Made by a program: the position numbers and the translations under genes. Under the pieces are notes generated by a model. It made no database searches. It was given only the letters and a program-made list of their open reading frames with translations, and had not been told where the DNA came from. DNA of 64,000 bases, from the IMG/VR virus record IMGVR_UViG_3300033182_000980, positions 62,001-126,000 of that record; one strand, given 5' to 3'. Below, in pieces: positions 12,524 through 46,220 of the stretch (positions are counted from its first letter, which is position 1; the number at the start of each line of letters is the position of its first letter).

Positions 12524-12565
12524 TTATAGAAACGAAGCCCCAATCTATCCAGAAAGGAATGAACC

Positions 12566-12799
12566 ATGACATCAGAAGGTTTTGCAGTTTTAGCGTTCAT
12601 CGCCCTATGTTTCGGGCTGATCTACATGGATCAAAATAGAGAGGTGTCCGTACACCTTTGCGAGTCCGAGGGCGTATCTACTTATGTGAGTAGGATCGCT
12701 CCCCCTCAAGAGTTGTCGTTTGGTGATTGCCATGAAGAAGTGATGGTCAATGAAAGATACTATCACTTACGACAAGTGATGAAGCGTGGGGTCAAATGA
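12566..12799 (+). CDS. Small membrane protein
   Basis: 77 aa, N-terminal hydrophobic helix, AAAGGA RBS. Confidence 0.65.
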   Translation: MTSEGFAVLAFIALCFGLIYMDQNREVSVHLCESEGVSTYVSRIAPPQELSFGDCHEEVMVNERYYHLRQVMKRGVK

Positions 12800-18904: not shown

Positions 18905-19554
18905 TTATGAAATACTTTAACCACCCACCCACAATGCGTAGAGTTTATGATGACGAAGAAGCTCAAACTCAACATCGGAAAAACGCACAAGCCGATTTCT
19001 ATGGTGAGATTACGGTAAGCGACAACCACATCTACCTCTATCAAGGCATCTCTCCCAAGGCTGTTATGGAGATGGGCATCGCTATCAAGTCCATTGGTCA
19101 ACAGATCATCAACATGGTCACTGATCTTGGACTCTCCCAAGCACCTGCTATCCACCTTCACATTAACTCTGGTGGTGGGTGTGCCTTTAGTGGTCTTGCT
19201 GGAGCGAGCCATATCTTAGACTCGGACATCCCTGTGTTCACCTATGTAGAGGGTTCAGCGGCTTCTGCGGCCACGATCATGTCTTGTGTCGGGGCTAAAC
19301 GCTTCATCACAGAGCATAGCTTCATGCTCATTCACCAGATCAGCACTGGTGTATGGGGTACATACGAGAACCTAAACGATGAGAAAGAGTCTATGGACTC
19401 GCTCATGGAGATGTTGGAGTCAATCTACCTCAAGAACACCAAGATGAAGAAGAAGCAACTCAAAGAGCTTCTAAAGCGTGATCTCTGGATGAACCCTAAG
19501 AAGTGTCTTGAGCTTGGATTGGTAGACGAGATCATCAAGTACGAGCGTGTTTAA
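18901..19554 (+). CDS. clpP: ClpP-like serine protease
   Basis: IHLHINSGGG, EGSAASAATIM (catalytic Ser), SFMLIHQ (His), RDLWMNPKKCLELGLVDEI. Confidence 0.85.
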   Translation: MIMKYFNHPPTMRRVYDDEEAQTQHRKNAQADFYGEITVSDNHIYLYQGISPKAVMEMGIAIKSIGQQIINMVTDLGLSQAPAIHLHINSGGGCAFSGLAGASHILDSDIPVFTYVEGSAASAATIMSCVGAKRFITEHSFMLIHQISTGVWGTYENLNDEKESMDSLMEMLESIYLKNTKMKKKQLKELLKRDLWMNPKKCLELGLVDEIIKYERV

Positions 19555-24340: not shown

Positions 24341-24440
24341 ATAATAAATACCACAAGCATAAGAGTCGCTTGGTTCTTCTTTGAGAGATCTCAAGTGCAA
24401 CTATGAGAAAAAACCGATTGAAAAAATGAAAGGAAAAGGC

Positions 24441-27101
24441 ATGGGATTCCCTTTTTCAGACCACGCATTGTCGCTATTGAACTCTTATTACATGAAAGAG
24501 TCGGACGGATCACCACAGGAAGCATTTAAGAGAGCCGCTTACGCATACACCCCCAATAAAGAGCTTGCAGAGAGAGTGTTAGGGTACGCAACCAAAGGAT
24601 GGTTCATGTTCAGTTCGCCCATACTCTCCAACGCTGAGAGTACAGGTATGCCGATTTCTTGCTTCCTCACTTATGTTCCCGACACAGTTGAAGGTCTGAT
24701 CGAACATACAGAGGAGCTACGCTGGATGAGCGTTATGGGAGGTGGTGTCGGTGGGCATTGGGATCATGTTCGCTCGGTCAGCAAAAAAGCACCTGGTCCA
24801 ATCCCTTTCCTCAAGACTGTTGACTCGGATATGGTCGCATATAGACAGGGGTCAACTCGCAAAGGTAGCTACGCCGCTTACCTAGACATTAGCCATCCCG
24901 ATGTTGTTGAGTTTATGAACCTACGCCTCCCGACTGGTGGAGATACTAACCGTAAGTGCTTCAACCTCAATAACGCCCTTAACCTCACAGATGACTTTAT
25001 GACTGCTGTGATGAATGGCGACACTTGGGATCTCATTGATCCAGCAGACCAAACCGTTAGAGACACCGTAGATGCTCGTGAGCTTTGGCAACGCATTCTT
25101 GAAGTACGCTTTCGTACAGGAGAGCCTTACCTCAACTTTATTGATGAGGCGAATAGAAATCTCCCTCAACCCCTTAAGGATAAGGGGCTAAAGATTCATG
25201 GCTCGAACCTCTGTGTCAGAGGAGATACACAAGTTCTCACTCGTGACGGTTATTTCCCGATCTCATCTTTGGTGGGTCAAGATGTTGAGGTGTGGAACGG
25301 AAAACATTGGTCGATGACCACCATTGTCCAAACAGGAGAAGATCAAGAGATCCTTGAGGTCATTCTTGACAATGGAACTACTCTTTACACGACACCTTAT
25401 CACAAGTTTTATGACCATAAGGGGGAGGTTGTAGAAGCTAAAGATTTAACTACCTCCACAAAGCTGTTGAAATTTGAGATGCCTGTGGTTGATGGTGAGG
25501 GTGATTGGGAGAACGCTTATTCTTGTGGCTTCTTCACAGGGGACGGAACATATAACCACCTCCATCAACCTGTATCTTATCTTTATGGTAAGAAGAAGGC
25601 ATTGCTTGACAGGGTATCTACACCTCTTTGTCGAGTTCGCACAGGTTCTAAGTCAAATCGCTTTTCAGTCCTCCATGACAAGTCTGAAATCAAGGCAAAG
25701 TACGAAGTGCCTCTTGGTATGTCCTTAAAGACTCGCTTAGATTGGCTTTCTGGACTCTTAGACGCAGATGGTTGCGTTGCTAGGAATGGGCTAAACCAAA
25801 GTTTACAGCTTGTGTCTACGAACCGAGAATTCCTTACTGATTTGAGTCTCATGTTAAACACACTTGGAGTTCAACCTAGAGTCTCTGATTTCATGCCTGA
25901 GAGAACGGTGGACTTTGGTTCAGAGAGGGGTGGCGAGTATCGTTGTAAGGAAGCATGGAGGGTCTTAATCAACTCTAATGACACACAAAAGTTACTTGGT
26001 TTGGGTTTGAATACTCATCGCCTAGTCTTAAAAGAGCATAAACCACAAAGGTCAGCCTCAAGGTTTGTTCGTGTCTTTAGTGTCTCTAAGTCACAAAATG
26101 CGGATACTTATTGCTTCAACGAACCAAAGAGACACATGGGAGTGTTTAATGGTGTTCTTACAGGCAACTGTAATGAGATCCACCTCCCAACAGGACCTAA
26201 TCGCTCGGCAGTCTGTTGCCTCTCTAGTCTCAATGTAGAGATGTTTGATGAGTGGAAAGACACCACCATCGTAGAGGACTTGATCGAGTTCCTAGATGAT
26301 GTTCTTCAGTATTTCATTGAGAACGCACCTCCTCAACTTGAGAAGGCGATCAAGAGTGCCGAAGCAGAACGCTCACTTGGTCTAGGAACAATGGGCTTCC
26401 ATGCCTACTTGCAAAAGAAGGGGCTACCCTTCGAGTCAGTCTTTGCTGTCTCGGCTAACCGAAAAATTTACTCGACCATTAAGGAGAGGGCAGTCGCTTC
26501 CTCTAAGCGTTTAGCAGAAATCAAGGGGGAGTATCTTGACGGTATTGGGTCGGGCATGAGGAACAGTCATCTTCTCGCCATCGCCCCTAATGCTAACTCG
26601 GCTATCATCCTTGATACAAGCCCAAGCATTGAACCGTGGAAGTCAAATGCTTTCACTCACAGGACACGAGCTGGTTCATTCTTGCAGTTCAACAAGTATC
26701 TTCAAGCTGTGCTTGAGAAGAAAGAGGGCATTGATCTTGATGAGGTGAAGCAGAGCATCATTCTCAATCAAGGGAGCGTACAGCACCTCGATTTCTTGAC
26801 CCAGCTTGAAAAGGACACATTCAAGACTGCATTTGAGATCGACCAGATGTGGATTGTGGAACACGCTTCCGTTCGTCAAGAGTGGGTGTGTCAAGGTCAG
26901 TCAGTCAACCTATTCTTCCCTGCTGGCTCGGATAAGAACTATGTCAACGCTGTTCACTTGAGTGCATGGAAGAAGAAGCTCAAGGGGTTGTACTACCTTC
27001 GCACCAACGCTGGTGTAGTTGCTGATAAGGTGAGTGAGAAGATTGAGCGTAAGGCATTAAAGGACTATGACCTTGATGAGTGCATGAGCTGTCAAGGTTA
27101 A
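24441..27101 (+). CDS. nrdA: Class Ia ribonucleotide reductase alpha subunit with intein
   Basis: FSSPILSN, PISCF, GGGVG, RKGSYAAYL, SNL|C...CNE, LAIAPNANS, QGQSVNLF, LKGLYY, C-terminal CMSCQG. Start 24441 by RBS (ORF open from 24381). Confidence 0.95.
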   Translation: MGFPFSDHALSLLNSYYMKESDGSPQEAFKRAAYAYTPNKELAERVLGYATKGWFMFSSPILSNAESTGMPISCFLTYVPDTVEGLIEHTEELRWMSVMGGGVGGHWDHVRSVSKKAPGPIPFLKTVDSDMVAYRQGSTRKGSYAAYLDISHPDVVEFMNLRLPTGGDTNRKCFNLNNALNLTDDFMTAVMNGDTWDLIDPADQTVRDTVDARELWQRILEVRFRTGEPYLNFIDEANRNLPQPLKDKGLKIHGSNLCVRGDTQVLTRDGYFPISSLVGQDVEVWNGKHWSMTTIVQTGEDQEILEVILDNGTTLYTTPYHKFYDHKGEVVEAKDLTTSTKLLKFEMPVVDGEGDWENAYSCGFFTGDGTYNHLHQPVSYLYGKKKALLDRVSTPLCRVRTGSKSNRFSVLHDKSEIKAKYEVPLGMSLKTRLDWLSGLLDADGCVARNGLNQSLQLVSTNREFLTDLSLMLNTLGVQPRVSDFMPERTVDFGSERGGEYRCKEAWRVLINSNDTQKLLGLGLNTHRLVLKEHKPQRSASRFVRVFSVSKSQNADTYCFNEPKRHMGVFNGVLTGNCNEIHLPTGPNRSAVCCLSSLNVEMFDEWKDTTIVEDLIEFLDDVLQYFIENAPPQLEKAIKSAEAERSLGLGTMGFHAYLQKKGLPFESVFAVSANRKIYSTIKERAVASSKRLAEIKGEYLDGIGSGMRNSHLLAIAPNANSAIILDTSPSIEPWKSNAFTHRTRAGSFLQFNKYLQAVLEKKEGIDLDEVKQSIILNQGSVQHLDFLTQLEKDTFKTAFEIDQMWIVEHASVRQEWVCQGQSVNLFFPAGSDKNYVNAVHLSAWKKKLKGLYYLRTNAGVVADKVSEKIERKALKDYDLDECMSCQG
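25212..26168 (+). mobile_element. Intein (319 aa) with LAGLIDADG homing endonuclease in NrdA
   Basis: CVRGDT start, TTPYHKF block B, GFFTGDG and GLLDADG motifs, ends GVLTGN followed by +1 Cys (the NLCxE catalytic Cys). Confidence 0.92.
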
Positions 27102-29834: not shown

Positions 29835-29842
29835 GACATTTG

Positions 29843-29854
29843 TAGATTGTTTAT
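29843..29854 (+). promoter_or_regulatory. Motif A variant
   Basis: TAGATTGTTTAT upstream of the 2H gene. Confidence 0.45.
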
Positions 29855-29901
29855 ATGACTACAGTTTATATGCGTTTACCAATCTCTAAAAGGAGTTTAA
29901 C

Positions 29902-30456
29902 ATGAACTACAATCGCATGATCCGAAGAGTCGCTTCTGCACACATGAGGAAGCTCGCACAAGAGAAGCCAGCAAGCGTTATGTTCGCTGAAGCTGTTATT
30001 GATACGAGAGACTTACTCAACTGGTTTCAAGATCAATCTGGTCTTGATCCCGAAGCAATGGGTTGGAAGGTTGCCGCCCACCACATGACCATAGAATTCT
30101 TTGACAAGAAAGAAAAGAAAGCTCTTAAGAGAGAGGGTCGTGCAGAGTCTAACATCCTTGAGCCTTATGCTGATCTCATTGGTAAGTCTGTTATTCTTGA
30201 TCTAGTCGGTTATGCACATGACGATAAGGGCATGGCTGTTCTTGTTGAGCCTAAAGGTCCTCTAGCTCGCCTTGTTAAGAACGCTGATCCACATATCACC
30301 ATCGCTACTAATGGTGTCGGGGCTAAATACAGCAACGAGCTTCTTGCAAAGGGAGAAATCATTCCAGCTCGTGGTTCGATTCAAGCACGAGTCGGCTGGA
30401 AAGATGCTCGTTCGGGTCAAGATATGTACGATCTTCCTTGGGACTTTGGTCAGTAA
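29902..30456 (+). CDS. 2H phosphoesterase (tRNA-ligase CPDase-like) with RVA-type leader
   Basis: Two HxT motifs: AHHMTI and DPHITIA; N-terminal MIRRVASAHMRKLA. Confidence 0.75.
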   Translation: MNYNRMIRRVASAHMRKLAQEKPASVMFAEAVIDTRDLLNWFQDQSGLDPEAMGWKVAAHHMTIEFFDKKEKKALKREGRAESNILEPYADLIGKSVILDLVGYAHDDKGMAVLVEPKGPLARLVKNADPHITIATNGVGAKYSNELLAKGEIIPARGSIQARVGWKDARSGQDMYDLPWDFGQ

Positions 30457-30534
30457 AAAACTTTTTTCAAAGTTTGAAAAGAAAAATTGTCCGATCTGTG
30501 TTCTAGGGAGCGTTAGTAGTTTAGAGGTTGCTGA

Positions 30535-30547
30535 TGTAACCCCTTAT
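30535..30547 (+). promoter_or_regulatory. Motif B (TGTAACCCCTTAT)
   Basis: Upstream of 30576. Confidence 0.55.
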
Positions 30548-30575
30548 CTATCACCCCTTAGAACAGGAGGACAAT

Positions 30576-31166
30576 ATGCAAGATTATCAAGATGACGAGA
30601 AGTTCATCTTCGCAGACTTTCTTGAAGCTGATACAGCACTCAAAGGTGTCAGCGATACCTTTCGCACATACGGACTTATGTTTGAGTGTGCCATCGAGGA
30701 AAACGCTAGACAGAACCTCATCGAGCAACCAATGACCGAGAAGCGTAATGGTGTCCGAGGGATCTCCGATGAGATCCTTGAAAACCAAAACACCTTCTAT
30801 GCTGTCGGAGCGTTCCTCAAGGTCTTGCATGAGCTTGGCTTTAGGGTCGAGGAAACTGTCGAAGAAGAGTGCGACTTTTGTGGTGTGATGCTCTGTGATG
30901 AAGATCGTTTACAGATCGACATCGAGTTTAACTATGGTGAGGATATGATCGAGTATTCGATCAACTTTAATGATGAGCGAGAGCATACAGGACACACATC
31001 TGCCGAGGAGTTTTTAGAGGGCATCTTTAACGGTGGTTGGAACTTGCCTAAGCTCACAGGTGTACTCAACCCCTCTAGCCTCTACGATGACCTTGAGGGC
31101 TTTATGCGAACCTTTAGGAGATCATGGTCGGAGTATAAGAAGGTTCTCAAAGAGAAGGTGGGCTGA
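30576..31166 (+). CDS. Acidic hypothetical protein
   Basis: AGGAGG RBS; preceded by TGTAACCCCTTAT. Confidence 0.75.
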   Translation: MQDYQDDEKFIFADFLEADTALKGVSDTFRTYGLMFECAIEENARQNLIEQPMTEKRNGVRGISDEILENQNTFYAVGAFLKVLHELGFRVEETVEEECDFCGVMLCDEDRLQIDIEFNYGEDMIEYSINFNDEREHTGHTSAEEFLEGIFNGGWNLPKLTGVLNPSSLYDDLEGFMRTFRRSWSEYKKVLKEKVG

Positions 31167-31239
31167 TTTGTAGTTTTTATATTCTCTCATTGTAGGGTGG
31201 TATCAATAACATTCAACCCTATAACGAGAGGTTAAGAAC

Positions 31240-32214
31240 ATGGCAGGACTACTTGAGTTCAGTACAACTTATAAGCCATTTCAGTATCCTTGGGCGATGA
31301 ACATCGCTGAGGAACACGAGAAAATTCATTGGGGGACTTGGGAGGCGAAGCTACAGGAAGATGTGAATCAATGGAAGGGTGGTCAGATTTCTGACGCAGA
31401 GAAACAACACATCACTCAAATCCTACGCATCTTTACTCAATCCGATGTCGCTGTCGGTGGGAACTACTGCGACATCTTTATCAAAGAGTTCAAGAACAAC
31501 GAAATCAGAAATATGCTCTTGAGCTTCGCCAATCGAGAGGGGACACATCAGAGGTCATACGCTCTCCTTAATGACACTCTAGGACTCGATGTTAAGGAAT
31601 ACTCAGCGTTCCTTGAGTTTGATGAGATGCGTGAGAAGATCGAGTTTATGACCCAAGCTCCAGAGGGTCTAGGTCGTATCACCAACCTTGCCTTTGAGCT
31701 TGCTCGCTCTGTCTGTAATGAGGGCATGAGCCTCTTCTCTGCTTTCGTCATGCTCCTCAACTTCCAACGCTTCGGCAAGATGCGTGGTATGTGCGAAATC
31801 GTTGAATGGTCCATTAGAGATGAGACTACCCATGTAAATGGTATGACCCAGCTCTTTCACGCTTACTGTAAAGAACACCCTCGTGTTGTGACTGATAAAC
31901 TCAAGAGCTACATCTACACCAACTATGAGAAGGCTGTTGAGCTAGAGGACGCTCTCGTTGATCTCGTCTTTGATCAAGTTGAGCTTGAGGGTCTGACCTC
32001 TCAAGAGGTTAAGACCTATGTCCGATACCTCGCTGATCGTAGACTTCTACAACTCGGACTTAAACCCATCTTCGGTCAAAAGAAGAACCCTCTACTATGG
32101 CTCGATTGGGTCATTAGTGGAGACTCTTTCAAAAACTTCTTCGAGGGTGTCGTGTCCGACTACAGTAGTAATGGGCTTTCGGGCGATTGGGATTGGGATA
32201 AAATCACAGCATAA
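31240..32214 (+). CDS. nrdB: Ribonucleotide reductase beta subunit
   Basis: YKPFQYPWA, HW, FTQSD, REGTHQRSY, EGMSLFSAF, WSIRDETTH di-iron and tyrosyl radical motifs. Confidence 0.95.
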   Translation: MAGLLEFSTTYKPFQYPWAMNIAEEHEKIHWGTWEAKLQEDVNQWKGGQISDAEKQHITQILRIFTQSDVAVGGNYCDIFIKEFKNNEIRNMLLSFANREGTHQRSYALLNDTLGLDVKEYSAFLEFDEMREKIEFMTQAPEGLGRITNLAFELARSVCNEGMSLFSAFVMLLNFQRFGKMRGMCEIVEWSIRDETTHVNGMTQLFHAYCKEHPRVVTDKLKSYIYTNYEKAVELEDALVDLVFDQVELEGLTSQEVKTYVRYLADRRLLQLGLKPIFGQKKNPLLWLDWVISGDSFKNFFEGVVSDYSSNGLSGDWDWDKITA

Positions 32215-32286
32215 CAAGCATTTAGGCTTGTTTAAATCTTAGTCCTCAAGTACGCTTTTCAATAAATACTTTGAAAGGACACTTGA

Positions 32287-33375
32287 ATGGCTAAAGGCTA
32301 TTATGTTTATCGTCAGTTCAACAAGAGGACAGGCGAGTATTACATCGGCAAGGGTACTTACTCTGATCGAGATCCCGATGGGAGTAAGTACAAAGGCTCT
32401 GGTATCTTGCTCTTGCGTAAAATGAACGCTCACCCAAATGACTTTGAGAAAGAAATCTTAAAGGATTTCGAGAGCGAAGAGGACGCTTACGCTTATGAGG
32501 CAGAGCTTGTGGGTGAGAGGTATATCGGTGGTGCAGACCATGACCCACTTTGTTTGAACATGAACAGTGGAGGCATGGGTTCGTCCTCTAATGCTTTGAA
32601 GCATTATTACTCTAACCCTATCGTGAAGATGGAGATGAGTGAGAGGATGAAAACCTTATGGGAAGATGAGGATTATCGGGAGAAAGTTCTAGCTTCAAGG
32701 GAGGGTGAAGCTAGAGAGAGGTGGCACGAGTCTCATCAAAAGGCTCTTAAAGACCCAGAGGTGAGAGCGAGAATAAAGGAGGGGGCAAACAATCCTCACA
32801 AAAAGAAATCAGTGCGAGAGGCACAGATTAAAATGAAACCGATCAATGTCGAGAAAGACGGAGTGGAGATTGAGATCCCTAGAGGAGAGTTAGCCGATTA
32901 CTTTAGGTTGGGTTGGTCGCTTTGCTCTAAGGGTGTTGTGAACATTCACCATATGGACATTGGGATATATAGCTGTGGTCAGCATGATGTGGTGAAGCAT
33001 CTTGTGTTGGAGCATGGATTCAAGTTTGGAACTCACTATGACTTAGAGCGGGTTAACTATGATGTGATCTCTAAGTTAGCGGGTGTTCGGGAGGCCAAGT
33101 CTAAGGGTCAGATGGGGAATTGGTCTTTGAAGCCTGTGAAGCTGATTAACTTAGAGGGTGAGGTAGAGCTTGTGCCCCGTGATGTTTACTTGGACAAGTT
33201 AGAGGAGGGCTATACCTTTAAGAGTGCGAATGTGATAATAAGAAACCACACGCTCAAGCAGACTTGCGTCTTAGGCAAGGGTAGAGCGAGGAGGGTCTTG
33301 CTAGAAAGGGGAGGTTGGGAGCTTGGTAGCAAGCGAGGTTATGAGGCAGTGAGTACCAAGTCTCTTGATTTGTAG
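32287..33375 (+). CDS. Free-standing GIY-YIG (Seg-like) homing endonuclease
   Basis: YYVY...TGEYYIGKG, YKGSG, AYAYEAEL, CLN; located downstream of nrdB. Confidence 0.8.
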   Translation: MAKGYYVYRQFNKRTGEYYIGKGTYSDRDPDGSKYKGSGILLLRKMNAHPNDFEKEILKDFESEEDAYAYEAELVGERYIGGADHDPLCLNMNSGGMGSSSNALKHYYSNPIVKMEMSERMKTLWEDEDYREKVLASREGEARERWHESHQKALKDPEVRARIKEGANNPHKKKSVREAQIKMKPINVEKDGVEIEIPRGELADYFRLGWSLCSKGVVNIHHMDIGIYSCGQHDVVKHLVLEHGFKFGTHYDLERVNYDVISKLAGVREAKSKGQMGNWSLKPVKLINLEGEVELVPRDVYLDKLEEGYTFKSANVIIRNHTLKQTCVLGKGRARRVLLERGGWELGSKRGYEAVSTKSLDL

Positions 33376-33384
33376 TTTATTTAT
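33373..33384 (+). promoter_or_regulatory. Motif A
   Basis: TAGTTTATTTAT upstream of leader protein 2; TAG is the GIY-YIG stop. Confidence 0.65.
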
Positions 33385-33434
33385 TGACTCTCCATTGGTG
33401 ATCTTTAACCCTTAACCGACAATGGAGAACTATT

Positions 33435-33779
33435 ATGAGAAGATCAGCAAGCGAAGTCTTAAGAAACTTAGAAATGCGTATCGCAAGACTTGAGAAGCAA
33501 GCAGGATTCACTGTAGGGCAAGAAGTACCTTATACACTAAGAACCCTTAAAAAAGTGATGTCAGAGGGTTATGGATTCAAAGTGATAAGTGTAGGGGGGG
33601 GTTTGAGTGATACTCTTGAATACAGTTTAACCTCCGAGCAAGTGGCTAAGATCAGTTCTAGGGGGAAGGTTGATGTTATGCTAAAAAACATTCAACAAGA
33701 GCTAAAGTTCTCGATAGAGCCTAACCTAAAGAGGAAGGGTCGTAAAAACTTCATTGTCCTCACAGAAAACCCTGCTTAA
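33435..33779 (+). CDS. MRRSASE-leader protein 2
   Basis: MRRSASEVLRNLEMRIARLEKQA. Confidence 0.85.
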   Translation: MRRSASEVLRNLEMRIARLEKQAGFTVGQEVPYTLRTLKKVMSEGYGFKVISVGGGLSDTLEYSLTSEQVAKISSRGKVDVMLKNIQQELKFSIEPNLKRKGRKNFIVLTENPA

Positions 33780-33860
33780 TGGCGAATGGGCAGAGGCTGT
33801 GAGTACCAAGTCTCTCAAGTAAGGGCGAATGGGATTGGTCAAATATCTCGGCATGATTTG

Positions 33861-33872
33861 TAGTTTATTTAT
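33861..33872 (+). promoter_or_regulatory. Motif A
   Basis: TAGTTTATTTAT upstream of leader protein 3. Confidence 0.65.
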
Positions 33873-33922
33873 AGGTTCTCCATTGGTGATCTTTTAACCC
33901 TTTAACCTCATGGAGAAATAAA

Positions 33923-34249
33923 ATGAGAAGATCAGCATCAGAAATTATCAGAAATCTTGAGCAAAGAATTGCTCGTCTTGAAAGTGAAAATGCGAAGACC
34001 GCAGGTCTTATGACAGTCCACACCTTAGATACAAGTAGTCGTGAAATACCTTACGGCACAACTGAATCAGAAGTTATGAACACTCAAGACCTTCCAAGTT
34101 TGCTTTTAAAGTCTGAAGTGACCATTACAAGAGACGGACTACAAGCAATAGATAGAGACGGTCGAGTCCACACGATTGAAATCTCAAAAGACGAGCTTAT
34201 TAAAGCTCTACTACCTCTAGCTAGACCTACATCTGTTAAGATGAAATAA
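33923..34249 (+). CDS. MRRSASE-leader protein 3
   Basis: MRRSASEIIRNLEQRIARLESENAKTA. Confidence 0.85.
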   Translation: MRRSASEIIRNLEQRIARLESENAKTAGLMTVHTLDTSSREIPYGTTESEVMNTQDLPSLLLKSEVTITRDGLQAIDRDGRVHTIEISKDELIKALLPLARPTSVKMK

Positions 34250-34253
34250 GAAA

Positions 34254-35132
34254 TTAATTAAGTCTTTTTGTCAGTTCGAGATCAAACTTTTCGATTGCTT
34301 CTCTAAACTGATCTTCGGACATGATTTGACCTCTCGCTGAACCAGCGATTTGATCGTGACCCCCAGCCCTATCTCCCCACCACTCTTGAACAAGTCGTCT
34401 ACAAGATAGGTTAGGGATTGGGTCGGCAGTAGAAATCCTAATCTTCTTATATTTTTCATCGTAAGTGATGATCGCATTTTCTCCACGATAGAGGTGGTTG
34501 ACCTTTTCACCTCTTGTTCGTCTAACGATCAATCCACAGGGTCGCATCTCTACAAAAGATGACTCATCTAGCTTTTCTTGGAGGTAGATGTGAGCATTAC
34601 CCATCCGAGTAGCTAGATGACCGTCATTGAGCATTTCCTTTATGAAGTCGAACGCTTGGTAGCAGAAATCGGTCACATCGTTGTTTCGTTTGGGGTCTAT
34701 CTCTGGATGGTTTTCATTGATCCATGCGTTTAGTCCATTATAAAGAACCCAACAGGGGTGGTCTTGTCTTGCCTTGTGGATGCCATTGGTGTCGATATGT
34801 TCAGCATAGAACCAGAATACAGGATTATCCTCGAACTGATCTGTAGCTCTCATAAGCCCACCGAGAGTGTCGATGTCGATATGTGAGATGAGGGCTACTT
34901 CATCATCATTGAGCTTTGGTATGTTCGAGTCATTACAAGGGGCTGGTCTACCAAAGGGGGTAACATGGCGACCGACATAAGGAGAACCGAGAGGTTGGTG
35001 GTGAGCGGCGGTGTACTTTGTACCTTCAAGGACGAACCCCCCATATTCTGCTTCCACCGTGAGTGCAGGAGGATTTGATAATCTAAGAGTGTCGGAGGCT
35101 AACTGTGAGGTCGGGGAAAGTATAACTAACAT
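34254..35132 (-). CDS. DHH-like phosphoesterase-related protein
   Basis: AAHH, SHIDIDTLGG and C-terminal AGGHDQIAGS resemble DHH/DHHA1 motifs. Confidence 0.45.
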   Translation of the reverse strand: MLVILSPTSQLASDTLRLSNPPALTVEAEYGGFVLEGTKYTAAHHQPLGSPYVGRHVTPFGRPAPCNDSNIPKLNDDEVALISHIDIDTLGGLMRATDQFEDNPVFWFYAEHIDTNGIHKARQDHPCWVLYNGLNAWINENHPEIDPKRNNDVTDFCYQAFDFIKEMLNDGHLATRMGNAHIYLQEKLDESSFVEMRPCGLIVRRTRGEKVNHLYRGENAIITYDEKYKKIRISTADPIPNLSCRRLVQEWWGDRAGGHDQIAGSARGQIMSEDQFREAIEKFDLELTKRLN

Positions 35133-35136
35133 TTTG

Positions 35137-35148
35137 TAGATCCTTTAT
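35137..35148 (+). promoter_or_regulatory. Motif A variant
   Basis: TAGATCCTTTAT upstream of the HAD gene. Confidence 0.4.
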
Positions 35149-35190
35149 AATGAGCGATTACTAAACATATTACCTTTGAGGAGAATAGAC

Positions 35191-35784
35191 ATGAGAAATC
35201 TTGTTGCGAGAGTGGCGACAAAGTATATGAAAACAAGCTCGGAGAATCTTGAGCTTCATATCTTTGACTTTGATAACACATTGTTCCGTAGCCCCGAACC
35301 ACCAGAGTGGTGGTCGAATAAGAAAATGGGCTATTGGTTCAATGAGGCTATTAGTTTGAGTGAGCCTTTTATCCCTCAAAAGCCAAGTGGGGATTATTGG
35401 TATGGGAGCGTTGTCGGTGAGGCTAAACGCTCTATCTCTAACATGGACACTCTTGCGATCATGTGTACAGGTCGCCTTAATGATAACGGTGCGATGCGTT
35501 ATCGTGTTGCCGAGTTATTAAAGGGTAAAGGGTTGGACTTTGATGAGGTTCACCTAAAGCCAGGTACAGGATCGACATCTCGCTACAAGGCTAAACTGAC
35601 CTTTGATCTCCTCAAGAAGTACCCAAACATTCAGAGCGTGTCTGTTTGGGAAGATACTCAGAAGAACCTCGATGCCATTGAGACAGTGTGTGATCACTTT
35701 GGCGTTGAGTTCAACGCTCACCTCATTAAACCTAACCCATACCCTGTCTCTATCACCAAAGAGCAGTATGACCTGCTAAAGTAA
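35191..35784 (+). CDS. HAD-superfamily phosphatase (Swiss-army-knife RNA-repair-like HAD) with RVA-type leader
   Basis: HIFDFDNTLFRSP (DxD), CTGR, LKP, VWED; N-terminal LVARVATKYMKTS. Confidence 0.75.
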   Translation: MRNLVARVATKYMKTSSENLELHIFDFDNTLFRSPEPPEWWSNKKMGYWFNEAISLSEPFIPQKPSGDYWYGSVVGEAKRSISNMDTLAIMCTGRLNDNGAMRYRVAELLKGKGLDFDEVHLKPGTGSTSRYKAKLTFDLLKKYPNIQSVSVWEDTQKNLDAIETVCDHFGVEFNAHLIKPNPYPVSITKEQYDLLK

Positions 35785-35791
35785 GGAGTCC

Positions 35792-38700
35792 ATGATGGCA
35801 ACGCCAGATACACGAATTTTCGCTGACTTGATGAAGTTAAGTCTAGCTATGAGAGCCTATGAAGAGCTTGGGGGAGATCCCAAAGGCTTAAAGAAAGCTG
35901 AGACTATTCTTAGACGCTACAAGGGCGAGTTTGACGCTATGGTTGACACCATGATCGAATCTCTTCTTGAAGAAGGTCTACCAGGTCTTCCAGCAGGTCC
36001 TATTATGACCAAGCTCACCCAAGCTCGTAAAGGGACTTTGGATGCTGACGAAGCGATTGGTGTCGCATCAGCGATCCAAGAGGTTATGGGCTGGTTTAAC
36101 TCTCGACTTGTACAGCTAAAAGAGAGATATCCAGACAAGAGAACTAAAGAGGCATTATGTGCGATTTCTAGTGCTTGCCACGAGGACTTCATTGACCTCA
36201 ATGCTCTCCTTCAAGCACCTAGAGCGAGCCGTGCGACTACAATCGGTAAATGGATCGCTATGGCTTGTGAAGAGCTTAATCAAGCGAATGAGGTAGAGCT
36301 TGGTATTGCCGACCTCCAAGAGTCAAATCTTCTTGCAGAAGAAATCAAGAGCATTGATGCTCGTATTCGTGCTGGTAGTCTTTCCGAGGATGAGCGTATT
36401 CATCTTCTTCAAGAGCGTGAGACTAAGTTTGATCTTCTTTTGGACATGAGCCGAAACACATCGAACCGACAAGCTGTTCTTAGTGAGGCGAGTCGTATTA
36501 TCAATACCAACACAACTTTCCAAACTCGCACAGGTGAGAAGCAAGGTCTTACACCAGAGCAAGAAGAAGCGATGATGGTGAGTGGTAAGTCAATCATCGC
36601 CGCAGGTGCTGGTTCGGGTAAGACTCGTGTTCTTGCATCCAAGATTGCATATACAATCCAAGAGCTTGGGGTCAATCCTTCACAGGTGATTGCTACTACT
36701 TTTAGTAAAGAAGCCGCTGGTGAGTTGAAAAAGAGGGCATTAAAGTATTCTGACGGTGCGGCGAGAGGTCGTTATATCGGTTCTACAACCCACTCCATCT
36801 CTTACAACATTTGTAATAAAGCAAATGTATTTAAAGAGATGGAACTGATGAATGATTCTCAAGTAGTCTCTTTTGTCCAAGCGGCGATTGCACAGGTTTC
36901 TTTACTGCCAACTACTCGTATTGGTGAGGTAGAACCAAAACCTTTAATTGATACGAGTAAAGCCAGCTCCGAGACTCAACTCATTCAAGATCAGGTGGTC
37001 GAGGAAGACGACTTTCAGATCGAGTTAAAAAAGCTCTTGATTCGTACCACTCAAGCGATTGCAGATAAAGCACTTTGGGGTCAGAGTAAAGGGTATGACT
37101 GGGCTACGAGAGATCTTACTGACTTGGATAACATTGTTCAGAGCTATAGAGGGAACAAAGCCACTTTAGTACCAGAAGATCATCCAGCTTGGGACGACCC
37201 GAACTTTAGAGCCATGATTAACTACAAGATCGAATATGGTCGTGGCAAAAAGTCATTAGAGAAGGCTGGTCCGATGCCTGGATTTAATCGTTTTGCATCA
37301 CAGTATGCGACCAAAGAGGATAAGGAAGTTCCTTTGAACCAATGGTTTAATCTTGGTGTAGATCAATATGATTTGATGATGGATCGAGACGAAAAAGATT
37401 ATATGAAGTATATCGGTATCGCTAAGGCGAAGCTACAGTCTCCGACAGAGCTTTGGTTTGAAGTTAGTGAGTCTGATAAGAGCTTTGTAGCTGTTTATGC
37501 GGCGTATGAATACCTCAAGTCAAAGAAGAAGATGTATGACTTTGATGATATGCTACTTAACGCTAATAAGGTACTTGTAGAGAACCCACAAGTTTTGAGG
37601 AGGCTTCAAAGCACCTATAAGTATATCTTTGTTGATGAAGCACAAGACTTGAATCAGAGTCAGCATATCTTGTTCGGCTTAATCGCTGGACACATCAACC
37701 CTGTGACTTTAGAGGCTTATGGTGATGGTCGAATGACAGCAGACACTTATTGTTTCATTGGAGACGATAAGCAAGCTATCTATGAGTTCAGAGGAGCAGA
37801 GCCAGAAGAGTTTATTGGTATTTCAGACCAAGAGGGTGGTGAGTTTAAGACCTCTATCTTGCGTACCAACTTTAGGTCTGGTCGAAACATCGTTCGTGCG
37901 GCAAACAGTCTCATCGAGAAGAACACTAAGCAGATTAAGATGACTTGTAATCCGAACGCTTCAAAAGAAGAAGGGAGGATTTCAAGTGAGGGTTATTTGA
38001 GTACAGAAACACCTCTTTCTCCTGGTGCTGTTGAAGTTGCACAAGAAATCCGACAGCTCATTGAACTTGAGGGTTGGGATCACGAGGACGGAGAACAGCA
38101 TAAGTTCGGTATCGGTTGTCGTACCAATAAAGAGCTTTCTGGATATGCTTTTGAGCTGTTGGTTCATGGACTTCCTTATTACTCTAAGAGGGATCTGCTT
38201 GATACTGTAACAATGCTTGCTCCAGTGGAGCTGATGTCAGTTAGATCTTCTGATCCTAAGTTGAGAGCTAAGGCTTTTTACAATGCCCACAAACATCTTC
38301 TTTTCTACATTGATCGTACTTTTAATGAGGTCGTGGAAAGAAAGTCAGCATCCGCCGAGATGAACCCACTTGATTGGTACTTGACTGGAGGCTATCGTCA
38401 AATTTACACAGCAACATCACGCAAGAAGAATCAGAACGCAAAGGCTTATGCTGATATGCTCCAGTCTATCATTGACTTTAATGGTACAAATGAAGAGCTT
38501 ATCGAATTTGTAAGCTACACTGTTCGTGGTGTTGATGGTAAAAACCTCATGGAGCGTCTAGGTCGAAATCTTTCAAGGGCAGAGCTGGAAGACTTAGCGA
38601 ATGAGACTACTGGAGAGGTTAGTCAAGAAGACCTTGAGGCATATGCCGAATCTGGTAGCTCTGTTATTCATAGGGTTATGCGAGATCGTACTCTTGAGGA

Positions 38701-39100
38701 GGGTCTTGAATTCTTTATGGGTCTTAAAGAGCAATCAAAGGAAATGATGAAGAATGAAGGCAAGAAGAACTGCGTGTTCTTGGGTACGATGCACTCTTGG
38801 AAGGGATTAGAGTGTCGTGATATGTATTTGCCTATGACTAAGGGAGAGTTCCCCGATGACCGATCACCTATTGATTCGGAGCGTAGGCTTGCTTATGTTG
38901 CGATTACTCGTGGTCAAGATCGAGTGAAGGTTCTTTTCGGTCCTGGTCGAAATGAACACACAGGTGGACCATCTCAGTTTATTTCCGAGGCTTGTATTCC
39001 ATCAGAGGATTTCTTGCAGACTCGAAATGCGAGCTTCAAGGGTGCGAGCATGGAGGACTTAGACTTCATGTACGCTATGGAGCAGTATCTCGATAGCTAA
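35792..39100 (+). CDS. UvrD/Rep/PcrA superfamily 1 helicase with long N-terminal extension
   Basis: AGAGSGKT, DEAQD, GDDKQAIYEFRGA, NFRS, ERRLAYVAITR. Confidence 0.92.
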   Translation: MMATPDTRIFADLMKLSLAMRAYEELGGDPKGLKKAETILRRYKGEFDAMVDTMIESLLEEGLPGLPAGPIMTKLTQARKGTLDADEAIGVASAIQEVMGWFNSRLVQLKERYPDKRTKEALCAISSACHEDFIDLNALLQAPRASRATTIGKWIAMACEELNQANEVELGIADLQESNLLAEEIKSIDARIRAGSLSEDERIHLLQERETKFDLLLDMSRNTSNRQAVLSEASRIINTNTTFQTRTGEKQGLTPEQEEAMMVSGKSIIAAGAGSGKTRVLASKIAYTIQELGVNPSQVIATTFSKEAAGELKKRALKYSDGAARGRYIGSTTHSISYNICNKANVFKEMELMNDSQVVSFVQAAIAQVSLLPTTRIGEVEPKPLIDTSKASSETQLIQDQVVEEDDFQIELKKLLIRTTQAIADKALWGQSKGYDWATRDLTDLDNIVQSYRGNKATLVPEDHPAWDDPNFRAMINYKIEYGRGKKSLEKAGPMPGFNRFASQYATKEDKEVPLNQWFNLGVDQYDLMMDRDEKDYMKYIGIAKAKLQSPTELWFEVSESDKSFVAVYAAYEYLKSKKKMYDFDDMLLNANKVLVENPQVLRRLQSTYKYIFVDEAQDLNQSQHILFGLIAGHINPVTLEAYGDGRMTADTYCFIGDDKQAIYEFRGAEPEEFIGISDQEGGEFKTSILRTNFRSGRNIVRAANSLIEKNTKQIKMTCNPNASKEEGRISSEGYLSTETPLSPGAVEVAQEIRQLIELEGWDHEDGEQHKFGIGCRTNKELSGYAFELLVHGLPYYSKRDLLDTVTMLAPVELMSVRSSDPKLRAKAFYNAHKHLLFYIDRTFNEVVERKSASAEMNPLDWYLTGGYRQIYTATSRKKNQNAKAYADMLQSIIDFNGTNEELIEFVSYTVRGVDGKNLMERLGRNLSRAELEDLANETTGEVSQEDLEAYAESGSSVIHRVMRDRTLEEGLEFFMGLKEQSKEMMKNEGKKNCVFLGTMHSWKGLECRDMYLPMTKGEFPDDRSPIDSERRLAYVAITRGQDRVKVLFGPGRNEHTGGPSQFISEACIPSEDFLQTRNASFKGASMEDLDFMYAMEQYLDS

Positions 39101-43835: not shown

Positions 43836-44306
43836 ATGAGAAGATCAGCTTCAGAAATCATCAGTGACCTTGAAAATCGTATTGCACGACTTGAAGGTAA
43901 GACAGCCAACCACAATGCGAACATTAAGATCTCAACTTCCTGGTATACAGGCAGTCCAAGAGATGATGTGAGAATGATGACCTTGACTGATATAGTTGAT
44001 GAAGCTCAATCTGATTTTGAGTCTCAACAAAATCAACTTAAGGAAGATATTGAGCTAGGAGACGCTGAACGAGGTACTAACTTTAATGTCTACATTGACA
44101 TTGGATATGGTCAACTTCGCATTAACTCTGGTGCTGATGATGGAACTACTAACTATCAAGCTGGATGTGTTTGTTGTCTTTGGTCTGCTTTTGTAGCGGC
44201 AGGTCTTGCCGAGATGTCCTATCCTAATGCTTCAAAAAAACTAGCTTCCATGCTAAAAACTCGGTTAAGAGGTTTCTCGGTATCTGTGAATATAGAGAAG
44301 GCTTAA
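43836..44306 (+). CDS. MRRSASE-leader protein 4
   Basis: MRRSASEIISDLENRIARLEGKTA; GGAGAA RBS places the start at 43836. Confidence 0.85.
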   Translation: MRRSASEIISDLENRIARLEGKTANHNANIKISTSWYTGSPRDDVRMMTLTDIVDEAQSDFESQQNQLKEDIELGDAERGTNFNVYIDIGYGQLRINSGADDGTTNYQAGCVCCLWSAFVAAGLAEMSYPNASKKLASMLKTRLRGFSVSVNIEKA

Positions 44307-45341: not shown

Positions 45342-46220
45342 ATGAGAAGATCAGCTAGTGAGATGATTAGAGATCTTGAGCGTAGGGTCGCTCGTCTCGA
45401 AAGACAGGCTAAAAAAGAACCACAGTGGATTACTTGGGCTTTAGAGGTTTTGGTGGAGAGTCGTGAAACTCAAGCCAAAAGCAGAGATGATCTTGAAGAG
45501 AGAAGAAACGGTCAAGTATGGGAATACTATCAAGGTCGTGATGATGTGATCTTGGTTTCTTCTGATGCAGATCGGAGTGATTACATCATTTACGAGAGTG
45601 ATGACGCTAAGATCGCTTTGAACAACGAGATCATGGAGGACATTCTTGAAAATAAGCCTTTAGAACAAATCATTCGGCATATGCCCTGGACAAAAGACAT
45701 TCTTTTAAGCACACTCAGTTTGCGTTATGGAGATCTTCAGATGTGGGCTTCCGAATGGGCAGAGGCTACTGTTGAAGGTTTAGATGATGACGAGCTTATT
45801 GAGAGGGCTGGTATGGAAGATGAGAAAGCAGAGTATGAAGAAGAAAGGGATTACTACGAGAAAAGAATGGATCCAGAAGTAGACGGTAAAATTAATCCTC
45901 TTTATTCGGACAACGCAGAAGTTATGGTCTTTGACTATAATAATATGCTTAACGACCTACCCGAAAATGCCAGAACTAAGTTGGTGGCAGAAGCAGAAGA
46001 AGAGATTAGTACGGCTCTTAAACAGTACCCTTATGAGTATCTTACAGAAGAAATGGGTTGGAGTGAGGGTCAAGTTATTCAAGCATTTGGTTCTCCCGAC
46101 AAAGACGAAATCGAAAGCATCATTGATCAGTTAGGTGCTTCCGAGAGAGAGTTTCAGTATCTCGCACCTAGTGGGAAAAGGCTTAGGACTAAACTCAACT
46201 ATGTGATTGAAGAGATCTAA
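45342..46220 (+). CDS. MRRSASE-leader protein 5 (highly acidic cargo)
   Basis: MRRSASEMIRDLERRVARLERQA; start 45342 by RBS. Confidence 0.85.
   Translation: MRRSASEMIRDLERRVARLERQAKKEPQWITWALEVLVESRETQAKSRDDLEERRNGQVWEYYQGRDDVILVSSDADRSDYIIYESDDAKIALNNEIMEDILENKPLEQIIRHMPWTKDILLSTLSLRYGDLQMWASEWAEATVEGLDDDELIERAGMEDEKAEYEEERDYYEKRMDPEVDGKINPLYSDNAEVMVFDYNNMLNDLPENARTKLVAEAEEEISTALKQYPYEYLTEEMGWSEGQVIQAFGSPDKDEIESIIDQLGASEREFQYLAPSGKRLRTKLNYVIEEI

What the first reader, a model, noticed from the sequence alone, without database searches (positions are those of the whole stretch)
29902..35784. 2H phosphoesterase and RNA-repair-type HAD phosphatase both carry RVA leaders
Seen: two HxT motifs in 29902 and DFDNT in 35191, each behind an RVA-type leader and a motif-A variant. 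Established: 2H enzymes open 2',3'-cyclic phosphates, and phage 2H protein Acb1 degrades CBASS signals; HAD/Pnkp-type phosphatases heal broken RNA ends. Inference: a virion-delivered end-healing or anti-defence kit active from the moment of injection. No RNA ligase is visible in this window.
Basis: inference. Interest (0 to 1): 0.6.

Follow-up and report, generated by a model that had tools for sequence, protein, structure and literature searches.

The report
Tagged RNA-end-healing enzymes, jumbo phage
A 375-kb uncultured marine jumbo phage encodes a cyclic-phosphodiesterase and a T4-Pnkp-like phosphatase that together can clean damaged RNA ends, and both carry a short N-terminal tag also found on head-module proteins and on an ADP-ribosyltransferase of a Pfam family defined in injected polyvalent proteins, which hints, without proving, that they travel in the virion.

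Summary
Window 29902-30456 encodes a 184-aa 2H phosphoesterase. Both HxT motifs are invariant, and the fold is closest to CNPase and the fungal Trl1 cyclic phosphodiesterase (Z 12.6 and 11.2). Window 35191-35784 encodes a HAD phosphatase of Pfam HAD_SAK_1 (67.8 bits), closest in fold to the T4 Pnkp phosphatase (Z 14.3).

Each gene has its own copy of a 17-nt phage promoter-like motif and a 19-22-aa N-terminal helix with the motif RVAxxYM. Leaderless homologues exist, so the leader is an add-on. The two enzymes are linked: a natural HAD-RVA-2H fusion exists, as does a HAD-kinase fusion, and the neighbourhood is conserved in relatives.

The RVA motif is a discrete short peptide motif with 12 sites in the genome. 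Seven are N-terminal. Others lie in two head-module proteins, and one is on an ART-PolyVal ADP-ribosyltransferase. In a related huge phage the HAD homologue is fused into the head gene module.

This makes virion delivery plausible (about 0.4), not shown. The genome (CheckV estimate 100% complete) has no detectable RNA ligase, so this is a healing kit without a sealing step. An Acb1-like role is less favoured. Both enzyme types are already described in jumbo phages; the tag system is the new part.

The parts
29839..29855 (+). Promoter-like 17-mer (TTTGTAG N4 TTTATA) 47 nt upstream of ORF A
   Evidence: matrix score 24.4; 70 genome sites vs 0-2 in shuffles
29902..29967 (+). ORF A leader, residues 1-22, with RVA motif (residues 6-17, 29917-29952). 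Predicted helix 3-19 with low pLDDT. Absent from homologues P0017-P0019
29902..30456 (+). ORF A, 184-aa 2H phosphoesterase of the CNPase/Trl1-CPD type. HxT motifs at 30079-30090 and 30289-30300
30576..31166 (+). 196-aa acidic protein of unknown function. Conserved between the 2H gene and RNR beta in relative L027
31240..32214 (+). Ribonucleotide reductase small subunit. A conserved neighbour of the 2H gene even in a distant relative where the 2H has no leader
34254..35132 (-). 292-aa phage-specific protein of unknown function, divergent from ORF B. Conserved at this place in L027
35133..35149 (+). Promoter-like 17-mer 41 nt upstream of the ORF B ATG
   Evidence: matrix score 18.9
35191..35247 (+). 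ORF B leader (MRNLVARVATKYMKTSSEN) with RVA motif at 35203-35238. Predicted helix. Absent from homologues P0089, P0090, P0091, P0093, P0095 and P0096
35191..35784 (+). ORF B, 197-aa HAD phosphatase (Pfam HAD_SAK_1) with a T4 Pnkp-phosphatase-like fold. DFDNT at 35266-35280
35792..39100 (+). 1102-aa SF1 helicase, UvrD-like by its GAGSGKT motif (read from the sequence, not scanned). It starts 8 nt after ORF B and is probably co-transcribed. Absent at this place in L027

Best explanation
Two stand-alone enzymes form a 3'-end healing pair for ribonucleotide substrates.

**Enzymes and chemistry**
- ORF A is a 2H cyclic phosphodiesterase of the CNPase/Trl1-CPD type. It opens 2',3'-cyclic phosphates, which are the ends left by metal-independent RNases such as anticodon nucleases, HEPN RNases and many toxins. 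By analogy with its closest folds the product is a 2'-phosphate.
- ORF B is a T4-Pnkp-type HAD phosphatase. It then removes the monoester, leaving a 2',3'-diol.
- The identity of both enzymes is shown (about 0.9). That they work together is inferred from a natural fusion and conserved linkage (about 0.6).

**Promoter and tag**
- In this phage lineage each gene has gained its own copy of the phage's 17-nt promoter motif. The same motif precedes the head and tail modules.
- Each has also gained a 19-22-aa N-terminal amphipathic helix with the peptide motif RVAxxYM.
- I read that motif as a docking tag for the assembling head, so that the enzymes are packaged and enter the cell with the DNA. This step is inference (about 0.4).

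**Sealing**
- The genome encodes no recognisable RNA ligase. The kit heals ends, or destroys cyclic-phosphate nucleotides, but does not seal breaks.
- Sealing, if it happens, would need a host enzyme or an unrecognised one.
For: **Enzyme identity**
- ORF A: Pfam tRNA_lig_CPD scores 21.9 bits for ORF A, and five homologues carry a precomputed PF08302 hit. Two HxT motifs are invariant. The AF2 model has pLDDT 90.6. VIA-align gives CNPase Z 12.6 (rmsd 3.0 over 139 residues) and Trl1 kinase-CPD 6u05 Z 11.2, against Z 6-7.6 for other 2H enzymes.
- ORF B: HAD_SAK_1 scores 67.8 bits. All four HAD motifs are conserved. The model has pLDDT 93.3. In an unbiased search of 48,161 chains the top three are the T4 Pnkp phosphatase (Z 14.3), Pnkp1 of the Pnkp1/Rnl/Hen1 repair complex (Z 13.9) and T4 Pnk (Z 13.3).

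**Coupling of the two enzymes**
- P0091 is an uninterrupted HAD-RVA-2H fusion.
- P0093 is a HAD-AAA_33 kinase fusion.
- In a relative at about 70% identity the two genes lie 2.7 kb apart, and both keep the leader and the promoter motif.

**The tag**
- Leaderless homologues of both enzymes exist. One has an in-frame stop two codons upstream of its start.
- An HMM of the motif finds 12 discrete sites scoring 13-21 bits, with the next hit at 4.6 bits.
- Seven sites are N-terminal. Two are at extreme C-termini. Three are internal.
- The tagged proteins include the 344-aa and 1171-aa proteins encoded in the head module, just upstream of the prohead protease gene. The protease itself has a weak similar stretch (ASKYMSL; 4.0 bits, E 1.8).
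- One N-terminally tagged protein is an ART-PolyVal ADP-ribosyltransferase (48.6 bits). Pfam defines that family in polyvalent proteins, which are predicted to be injected; T4 Alt, an ART of a different family, is packaged and injected (PMC5512222).
- In LR745208.1 (major capsid protein 89% identical) the HAD homologue is fused to a TopIB-like domain through an RVA-like linker. That gene lies between the portal and the protease.

**Promoter**
- The motif precedes the head module, the major-capsid-protein operon, a tail protein and the baseplate module.

**Precedent**
- 2H domains fused to MuF or portal domains have been predicted to be injected (PMC5512222).
- BFVD matches of ORF A include 2H domains inside actinophage 'capsid morphogenesis' and 'structural' proteins.
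Against: - No data show either protein in particles, or any cleavage of the leader.
- The promoter motif also precedes non-virion genes, including the TopIB-like gene and, weakly, RNR beta. ORF B probably shares its transcript with a helicase.
- The complex test of ORF A with the capsid and scaffold-like proteins gave no verdict.
- The phage has its own ClpP, so a degron reading of terminal tags is open.
- The 2H gene sits next to RNR genes even where it has no leader. That fits a metabolic role as well.
- No RNA ligase and no Tpt1 are found, so classical repair cannot be completed by phage genes. Healing to a 3'-OH would also make ends unusable for RtcB (established knowledge of RtcB chemistry).
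- Substrate (RNA end versus free nucleotide) and product (2'-P versus 3'-P) are inferred from fold neighbours only.
Confidence: 0.45

Rival explanations
1. The two enzymes work in the cytoplasm to scavenge host RNA. RNA fragments and mononucleotides with cyclic-phosphate or 3'-phosphate ends cannot be degraded by 3'-5' exonucleases. The pair converts them to 3'-OH forms, which feeds nucleotide pools, and so RNR, for a 375-kb genome. On this reading the leader has another role, such as a degron for the phage ClpP, regulation or oligomerisation.
For: - The 2H gene lies beside RNR genes in the window, in L027 and in the distant L021, where it has no leader and sits in an operon.
- The phage has nucleotide-metabolism genes nearby and its own ClpP.
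- RVA motifs lie at N- and C-termini, as protease recognition tags do.
- No ligase is present.
Against: - Fusions of this HAD family with a polynucleotide-kinase-type domain and with 2H, and the Pnkp fold, point to polynucleotide ends.
- The motif also occurs in head-module proteins and on an ART-PolyVal protein.
- The leader and promoter were gained together.
Confidence: 0.25
2. The role is anti-signalling, as with Acb1 or the viral 2',5'-phosphodiesterases. ORF A cleaves cyclic or 2'-5' oligonucleotide second messengers of CBASS, type III CRISPR or related defences. ORF B dephosphorylates the products.
For: - ORF A has the 2H fold with both HxT motifs.
- Acb1 and rotavirus VP3 appear among the fold matches.
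- 2H domains not associated with ligases were proposed to degrade such signals (PMC5512222).
- The genome has no ligase.
Against: - Acb1 ranks well below Trl1/CNPase-type proteins: E 1.8e-3 against 1e-5 in BFVD, and Z about 6 against 12.6 in the PDB for the nearest non-CNPase 2H enzymes.
- Known Acb1-type enzymes act alone (my recollection, not tested here), whereas this 2H is linked and even fused to a Pnkp-type phosphatase.
Confidence: 0.12
3. ORF B is mainly a DNA 3'-phosphatase that heals DNA breaks together with the neighbouring helicases, the TopIB-like protein and the phage's LigD-like ATP-dependent ligase. ORF A is unrelated to it.
For: - ORF B is followed 8 nt later by an SF1 helicase and then a RecD2-like helicase.
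- Its homologue in LR745208.1 is fused to a TopIB-like domain.
- The only ligase in the genome is of the DNA-ligase type, and the best NCBIfam model is the NHEJ ligase.
- T4 and mammalian PNKP phosphatases act on DNA (established knowledge).
Against: - The HAD-2H fusion and the conserved 2H-HAD neighbourhood tie it to ribose chemistry.
- The UvrD-like gene is absent at this place in L027, so that adjacency is not conserved.
Confidence: 0.08
4. The leaders have no function as peptides. They are by-products of a duplicated expression cassette (promoter, 5'UTR and first codons) or of start-codon miscalls.
For: The type-1 leader family is conserved at the DNA level together with its promoter and 5'UTR in at least 25 copies.
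Against: - The RVA leaders share no DNA similarity beyond the motif codons.
- The motif also occurs at C-terminal and internal sites.
- It is conserved in orthologues at about 47-75% identity.
- Type-1 copies show pN/pS of 0.35 with pS of 0.63, and serine codons switch between TCA and AGT.
Confidence: 0.05

Closest known systems
T4 polynucleotide kinase-phosphatase (Pnkp), phosphatase domain; Pnkp1 of the bacterial Pnkp1/Rnl/Hen1 system
   Same: DxDxT HAD phosphatase. These are the best structural matches of ORF B (Z 14.3, 13.9 and 13.3). Homologues of ORF B occur fused to an AAA_33 kinase (P0093).
   Different: - ORF B stands alone and has no kinase domain. A separate AAA_33 kinase lies 69 kb away.
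- No partner RNA ligase is present.
- ORF B carries an N-terminal RVA tag.
- Sequence similarity to the PHROG polynucleotide-kinase family is only marginal (E 0.007).
Fungal/plant tRNA ligase Trl1 CPD domain and vertebrate CNPase (2H superfamily)
   Same: Same fold, with two HxT motifs. These are the best matches of ORF A (Z 12.6 and 11.2). The Pfam tRNA_lig_CPD match covers the second HxT region.
   Different: - ORF A scores just under the Pfam cut-off (21.9 against 23 bits).
- It is 184 aa and stands alone, with no ligase or kinase domains.
- It has an N-terminal tag.
- Its product regiochemistry is untested.
2H plus 'Swiss-army-knife' HAD enzymes of jumbo phages (Iyer et al. 2021, PMC7824862)
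   Same: That survey describes 2H phosphoesterases resolving cyclic ends and stand-alone SAK-family HAD phosphatases removing the linear phosphate in jumbo phages. This is the same pair of families as here.
   Different: - There these enzymes are reported as generally congruent with ATP-grasp RNA ligases. Here none is found.
- No leader or tag is described there.
2H domains in polyvalent proteins fused to MuF or portal domains (Iyer et al. 2017, PMC5512222)
   Same: These are 2H enzymes predicted to be packaged and injected, and they are not associated with RNA ligases. BFVD matches of ORF A include such large actinophage proteins.
   Different: Here there is no fusion, and the genome has no MuF domain at all. 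Delivery, if any, would rest on a short peptide tag. ORF A is closer to the Trl1/CNPase type.
T4 capsid targeting sequences (internal proteins, Alt) and propeptides of phiKZ/SPN3US-type head proteins
   Same: Short N-terminal sequences shared by otherwise unrelated proteins. One of the tagged proteins is an ADP-ribosyltransferase. A prohead protease gene is present.
   Different: - There is no T4-type protease (PF03420 absent).
- No LxE or AxE cleavage consensus is evident after every tag.
- The motif also works in sequence terms at C-termini and internally, more like a docking peptide than a propeptide.
- Packaging is untested.
Acb1 (phage anti-CBASS 2H phosphodiesterase)
   Same: 2H fold and a phage origin.
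   Different: Acb1 ranks far below the CNPase/Trl1 type in fold searches. ORF A is linked to a Pnkp-type phosphatase.

Membership tests
2H phosphoesterase superfamily | Two H-x-T/S motifs | tested here: met
   HHMT (residues 60-63) and PHIT (130-133), invariant in 16 sequences
2H phosphoesterase superfamily | Pseudo-symmetric two-lobe alpha+beta fold | tested here: met
   AF2 pLDDT 90.6. CNPase Z 12.6, Trl1 CPD Z 11.2, LigT and other 2H enzymes Z 6-7.6
2H phosphoesterase superfamily | Hydrolysis of 2',3'-cyclic phosphate | not testable with these tools
   Needs an enzyme assay
Pfam tRNA_lig_CPD (PF08302) | Score at or above the gathering cut-off (23 bits) | tested here: not met
   21.9 bits and 21 bits. 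Five homologues carry a precomputed PF08302 hit. Treat as the same clade by fold, not as a curated member
HAD superfamily, Pfam HAD_SAK_1 (PF10307) | Score above the gathering cut-off | tested here: met
   67.8 bits against 25.6. All 55 homologues carry PF10307
HAD superfamily, Pfam HAD_SAK_1 (PF10307) | Motifs I (DxDxT), II (S/T), III (K) and IV (acidic) | tested here: met
   D31/D33 are at least 90% conserved; T98, K138 and D160 are invariant
T4-type RNA repair pathway (Pnkp + Rnl) | 3'-phosphatase of the Pnkp fold | tested here: met
   Z 14.3 to 5uj0_B
T4-type RNA repair pathway (Pnkp + Rnl) | 5'-kinase fused or linked | tested here: inconclusive
   A stand-alone AAA_33 protein lies at genome 28203-28787, with no linkage to ORF A or B. 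The fusion exists in homologue P0093
T4-type RNA repair pathway (Pnkp + Rnl) | RNA ligase (Rnl1, Rnl2 or RtcB) | tested here: not met
   PF09414 and PF01139 give no hit, with working controls. PF09511 gives no hit, but its control was silent. The only ligase is an ATP-dependent DNA-ligase type
Acb1-type anti-CBASS nuclease | Closest similarity to Acb1 among 2H enzymes | tested here: not met
   Acb1 models at E 1.8e-3 and 7.5e-3, ranks 23 and 35. None among the top 50 PDB entries
Acb1-type anti-CBASS nuclease | Cleavage of cyclic oligonucleotide signals | not testable with these tools
   Needs an assay
Capsid-targeted (packaged, injected) phage proteins | A shared terminal targeting peptide on unrelated cargo | tested here: met
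   12 discrete RVA sites, 7 of them N-terminal. Cargo includes 2H, HAD and ART-PolyVal proteins
Capsid-targeted (packaged, injected) phage proteins | Link of the peptide to head assembly components | tested here: inconclusive
   The motif occurs in two head-module proteins, with a weak similar stretch in the protease. The HAD homologue lies inside the head module of LR745208.1. The complex prediction gave no verdict
Capsid-targeted (packaged, injected) phage proteins | Presence in virions, and processing by the prohead protease | not testable with these tools
   Needs particle proteomics. The phage is uncultured
Polyvalent / MuF-fused injected effectors | Fusion to MuF or portal domains, or a multidomain architecture | tested here: not met
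   Both enzymes stand alone. No MuF domain is present in the genome

The most novel reading that the evidence does not exclude
The RVA motif and the related 23-aa MRRSASEIIRNLExRIARLERQA leader form a sequence-addressed cargo-loading system of a Bacillus-phage-G-related marine jumbo phage. About 40 otherwise unrelated small proteins are loaded into the capsid through a short docking helix and are injected with the DNA. They include an RNA-end-healing 2H/HAD pair, an ADP-ribosyltransferase, a C39-like peptidase and DUF4258 proteins. On this reading, RNA-damage countermeasures are in the cell before any phage gene is expressed.
Probability: 0.3. Interest if true: 0.8.

Novelty: new variant of a known kind. 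Interest (0 to 1): 0.55.

Why it matters
Host defences that cut tRNA or mRNA act fast, and known phage countermeasures such as T4 Pnkp/Rnl must first be expressed. Enzymes pre-loaded in the virion would change the timing of that arms race. So far this has only been predicted for 2H domains fused to MuF or portal proteins.

Whatever its role, a short, portable peptide tag shared by dozens of unrelated phage proteins is a compact handle. It could be used to list the proteins that share this tag in uncultured jumbo phages from sequence alone. If the loading role is confirmed, it could be used to load foreign cargo into capsids.

The finding also shows a 2H plus SAK-HAD pair without any RNA ligase. 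This bears on whether such pairs repair RNA or rather remove cyclic-phosphate ends and signals.

Tried and rejected
- **Searches of cultured phages.** The nucleotide search gave only RNR matches. The tblastn search with ORF A found nothing, and ORF B hit only four uncultured huge phages. No proteomics-backed relative is available.
- **PDB by sequence.** A profile of ORF A found nothing meaningful; the fold search was needed.
- **Prohead protease type and MuF.** A T4-type protease (PF03420) and a MuF domain (PF04233) are absent.
- **Complex prediction.** Capsid protein plus scaffold-like protein plus ORF A scored 0.25, under the 0.34 mark. This is no verdict and is not evidence either way.
- **Literature.** A search for the leader strings found nothing relevant. 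The phage G structure paper is not held.
- **Type-1 leader.** A word search with residues 1-40 found only close relatives. A tblastn of a type-1 protein against cultured phages found nothing.
- **The 292-aa gene (34254-35132).** The weak DHHA1 hint (E 0.053) did not hold up: no family at E 0.01 and only unnamed phage clusters.
- **CCA-adding enzyme.** My guess that the 253-aa protein at genome 253928-254689 is one found no family support.
- **Terminators and sigma-70 promoters.** The scan around the genes was not above chance.
- **5'UTR hairpins.** ORF A and ORF B have none (z +0.7 and +0.6). The type-1 UTR pairing is weak on energy alone (z -1.1 to -1.5).
- **Big representative search.** Not used, because family scans, the word search and folds settled both proteins.

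Full report
**Setting.** The window is bases 62001-126000 of a single 375,691-bp viral contig (GC 44.9%, CheckV estimate 100% complete).
- Its major capsid protein is 89% identical to that of the uncultured huge phage LR745208.1. It is 46% identical to Tunturiibacter phage Tunturi_5 and 38% to Bacillus phage G.
- Homologues of the proteins studied come from marine metagenomes, Tara among them.
- No cultured close relative exists in the phage collection.

**Observation.** ORF A (29902-30456, 184 aa) has HHMT and PHIT, both invariant in 16 homologues.
- ORF B starts at ATG 35191 behind GAGGAG, not at the upstream TTG.
- It carries DFDNT plus HAD motifs II-IV.
- Both genes lie behind a 17-nt motif, TTTGTAG N4 TTTATA, at 29839-29855 and 35133-35149.
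- The pattern occurs 11 times in the window against 0.04 expected.
- A matrix gives 70 genome sites against 0-2 in shuffled genomes. Nearly all lie 20-60 nt upstream of co-oriented starts.

**What the enzymes are.** ORF A scores 21.9 bits on Pfam tRNA_lig_CPD, just under the cut-off of 23.
- Its AF2 model (pLDDT 90.6) matches the CNPase catalytic domain (Z 12.6, rmsd 3.0 over 139 residues) and the CPD domain of fungal Trl1 (6u05, Z 11.2).
- Other 2H enzymes score Z 6-7.6.
- Among viral models the best matches are Trl1-like giant-virus proteins. Acb1 appears only at E 1.8e-3.
- ORF B is a clear HAD_SAK_1 member (67.8 bits).
- Its model (pLDDT 93.3) was compared with 48,161 representative chains. 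It is closest to the T4 Pnkp phosphatase (Z 14.3), to Pnkp1 of the Pnkp1/Rnl/Hen1 complex (Z 13.9) and to T4 Pnk (Z 13.3).
- The pair of families is already described for jumbo phages: 2H enzymes resolve cyclic ends and stand-alone 'Swiss-army-knife' HAD phosphatases remove the phosphate (PMC7824862).

**Are the two linked?** Three observations say yes.
- Among 55 ORF B homologues, P0091 is an uninterrupted HAD-2H fusion, and P0093 is a HAD-AAA_33 kinase fusion.
- In a relative at about 70% identity (L027) the order is SNF2(-), 2H, 193 aa, RNR beta, 293 aa(-), HAD, RecD2-like helicase. The two genes are 2.7 kb apart there.
- In the window a GIY-YIG homing endonuclease, two leader-bearing genes and a UvrD-like helicase have been inserted into that arrangement.

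**The leaders.** Both leaders are add-ons.
- Homologues P0017-P0019 of ORF A start exactly where its leader ends. P0019 has an in-frame stop two codons upstream of its start.
- Six ORF B homologues also lack the leader.
- Orthologues keep the leader down to about 72% (ORF A) and 47% (ORF B) identity. In L027 they also keep the promoter-like motif.
- A profile of the motif finds 12 discrete sites in the genome, scoring 13-21 bits, with the next hit at 4.6 bits.
- Seven sites are N-terminal. Two are at the very C-terminus. Three are internal.
- N-terminal enrichment is 7 observed against 0.03 in shuffles.

**What carries the tag.**
- An ART-PolyVal ADP-ribosyltransferase carries it. A C39-like peptidase has a weaker, related N-terminus (MRRLAK...).
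- The 344-aa and 1171-aa proteins of the head module carry it. They are encoded just upstream of the prohead protease, the scaffold-like protein and the capsid protein.
- The protease has a weak similar stretch (4.0 bits, E 1.8).
- In the fusions the motif sits between domains: KTRVASRWMKAQ in P0091 and an RVA-like linker in the HAD-TopIB-like protein of LR745208.1.
- The LR745208.1 fusion gene lies between portal and protease.
- Occurrence at either terminus fits a docking peptide better than a cleavage site.

**A second leader family.** A related 23-aa leader (MRRSASEIIRNLExRIARLERQA) heads at least 25 genes.
- It comes with a conserved promoter and 5'UTR.
- Its copies show pN/pS of 0.35 at pS of 0.63, so the peptide itself is under selection.
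- Its first half resembles the RVA motif: RRSASEIIR against KRVASRYMK. This is my reading of the sequences.

**Does this mean virion delivery?** The circumstantial case is as follows.
- The tag occurs in head-module proteins, and the cargo is of the injected-effector type.
- The promoter motif also precedes the head module, the capsid operon, a tail protein and the baseplate module.
- The distant relative L021 has the leader families on other genes. Its 2H gene is leaderless and sits in an ordinary operon without the motif.
- There is precedent for 2H domains predicted to be injected as MuF or portal fusions (PMC5512222).

Against it:
- No particle data exist.
- The motif also precedes non-virion genes.
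- ORF B is probably co-transcribed with a helicase.
- The phage has its own ClpP, which allows a degron reading.
- The complex prediction gave no verdict.
- I put packaging at about 0.4.

**Pathway completeness.** The genome has no Rnl2-type or RtcB ligase, with working controls. It has no Rnl1 hit, but that control was silent.
- It has no Tpt1 and no NAD-dependent ligase.
- The one ligase is of the ATP-dependent DNA-ligase type, 0.8 kb upstream of a cluster of nine tRNA genes (Arg x2, Gly, Asn, Tyr, Glu, Lys, Leu, Met).
- A stand-alone AAA_33 kinase lies elsewhere in the genome.
- So the phage can heal 3' ends, and perhaps phosphorylate 5' ends, but encodes no recognisable sealing step.
- It keeps open the rival roles of RNA scavenging next to RNR and of signal degradation.

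**Verdict.** The healing-kit reading is well supported but the kit is incomplete. Virion delivery is a reasonable, testable inference. The new element is the tag system, not the enzymes.

Noticed in passing
window 5935-6342(-), 33435-33779, 33923-34249, 43836-44306, 45342-46220; at least 25 genes genome-wide: A repeated cassette: promoter motif, a roughly 45-nt conserved 5'UTR and a 23-aa leader (MRRSASEIIRNLExRIARLERQA) placed in front of unrelated small proteins. Pfam recognises only DUF4258 (two proteins) and HAAS (one) among 30 of them. pN/pS among copies is 0.35.
   Followed up: partly
window 33386-33450 and 33874-33938: In the type-1 5'UTR, CUCCAUUGG pairs with CAAUGGAG and so covers the Shine-Dalgarno sequence. 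An alternative pairing joins the UTR to codons 2-5. Folding energy alone is not significant (z -1.1 to -1.5), and covariation was not counted.
   Followed up: partly
window 10288-12183(-), residues 457-469; genome 53586-57101(-), 57108-58142(-), 257901-260747(-), 271122-272366(-): The RVA motif also occurs internally or at the extreme C-terminus of larger proteins, two of them in the head gene module. A weak similar stretch (ASKYMSL; 4.0 bits, E 1.8) lies in the prohead protease at residues 389-395.
   Followed up: partly
genome 15198-16274(-) (L001): A 358-aa protein with an N-terminal RVA motif and an ART-PolyVal ADP-ribosyltransferase domain (48.6 bits). It lies in a cluster of leader-bearing genes near the terminase.
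   Followed up: partly
L018 (LR745208.1) 11989-13515: In a related 485-kb phage the HAD homologue is the N-terminal domain of a 508-aa protein. Its C-terminal part matches the window phage's TopIB-like protein (genome 61715-63145; Topoisom_I 48 bits). The gene lies between portal and prohead protease.
   Followed up: partly
window 18901-19554: A phage-encoded ClpP-family protease (92 bits), in addition to the head maturation protease of the head module.
   Followed up: no
genome 171646-172593 and 173376-180000 (L025, L007): The only ligase, of the ATP-dependent DNA-ligase type (best NCBIfam model: NHEJ ligase), lies 0.8 kb upstream of a cluster of nine tRNA genes. The cluster includes Lys(UUU), Tyr, Asn, Glu and two Arg.
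   Followed up: partly
window 24381-27101, 32287-33375; genome 3255-7340(-): Selfish elements sit in or beside essential genes. The RNR large subunit is 906 aa with an intein-like insert (read from the sequence). A GIY-YIG homing endonuclease lies after RNR beta (phrog_314). The terminase large subunit carries an intein with LAGLIDADG domains.
   Followed up: partly
window 16106-17827: A 573-aa protein with a WGR domain (48 bits) behind a strong copy of the promoter motif.
   Followed up: no
P0048, P0059 (metagenomic homologues of ORF B): Some close homologues (about 82% identity or lower) carry an extra C-terminal domain of about 120 aa and unknown function after the HAD domain. The window's ORF B lacks it.
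   Followed up: no
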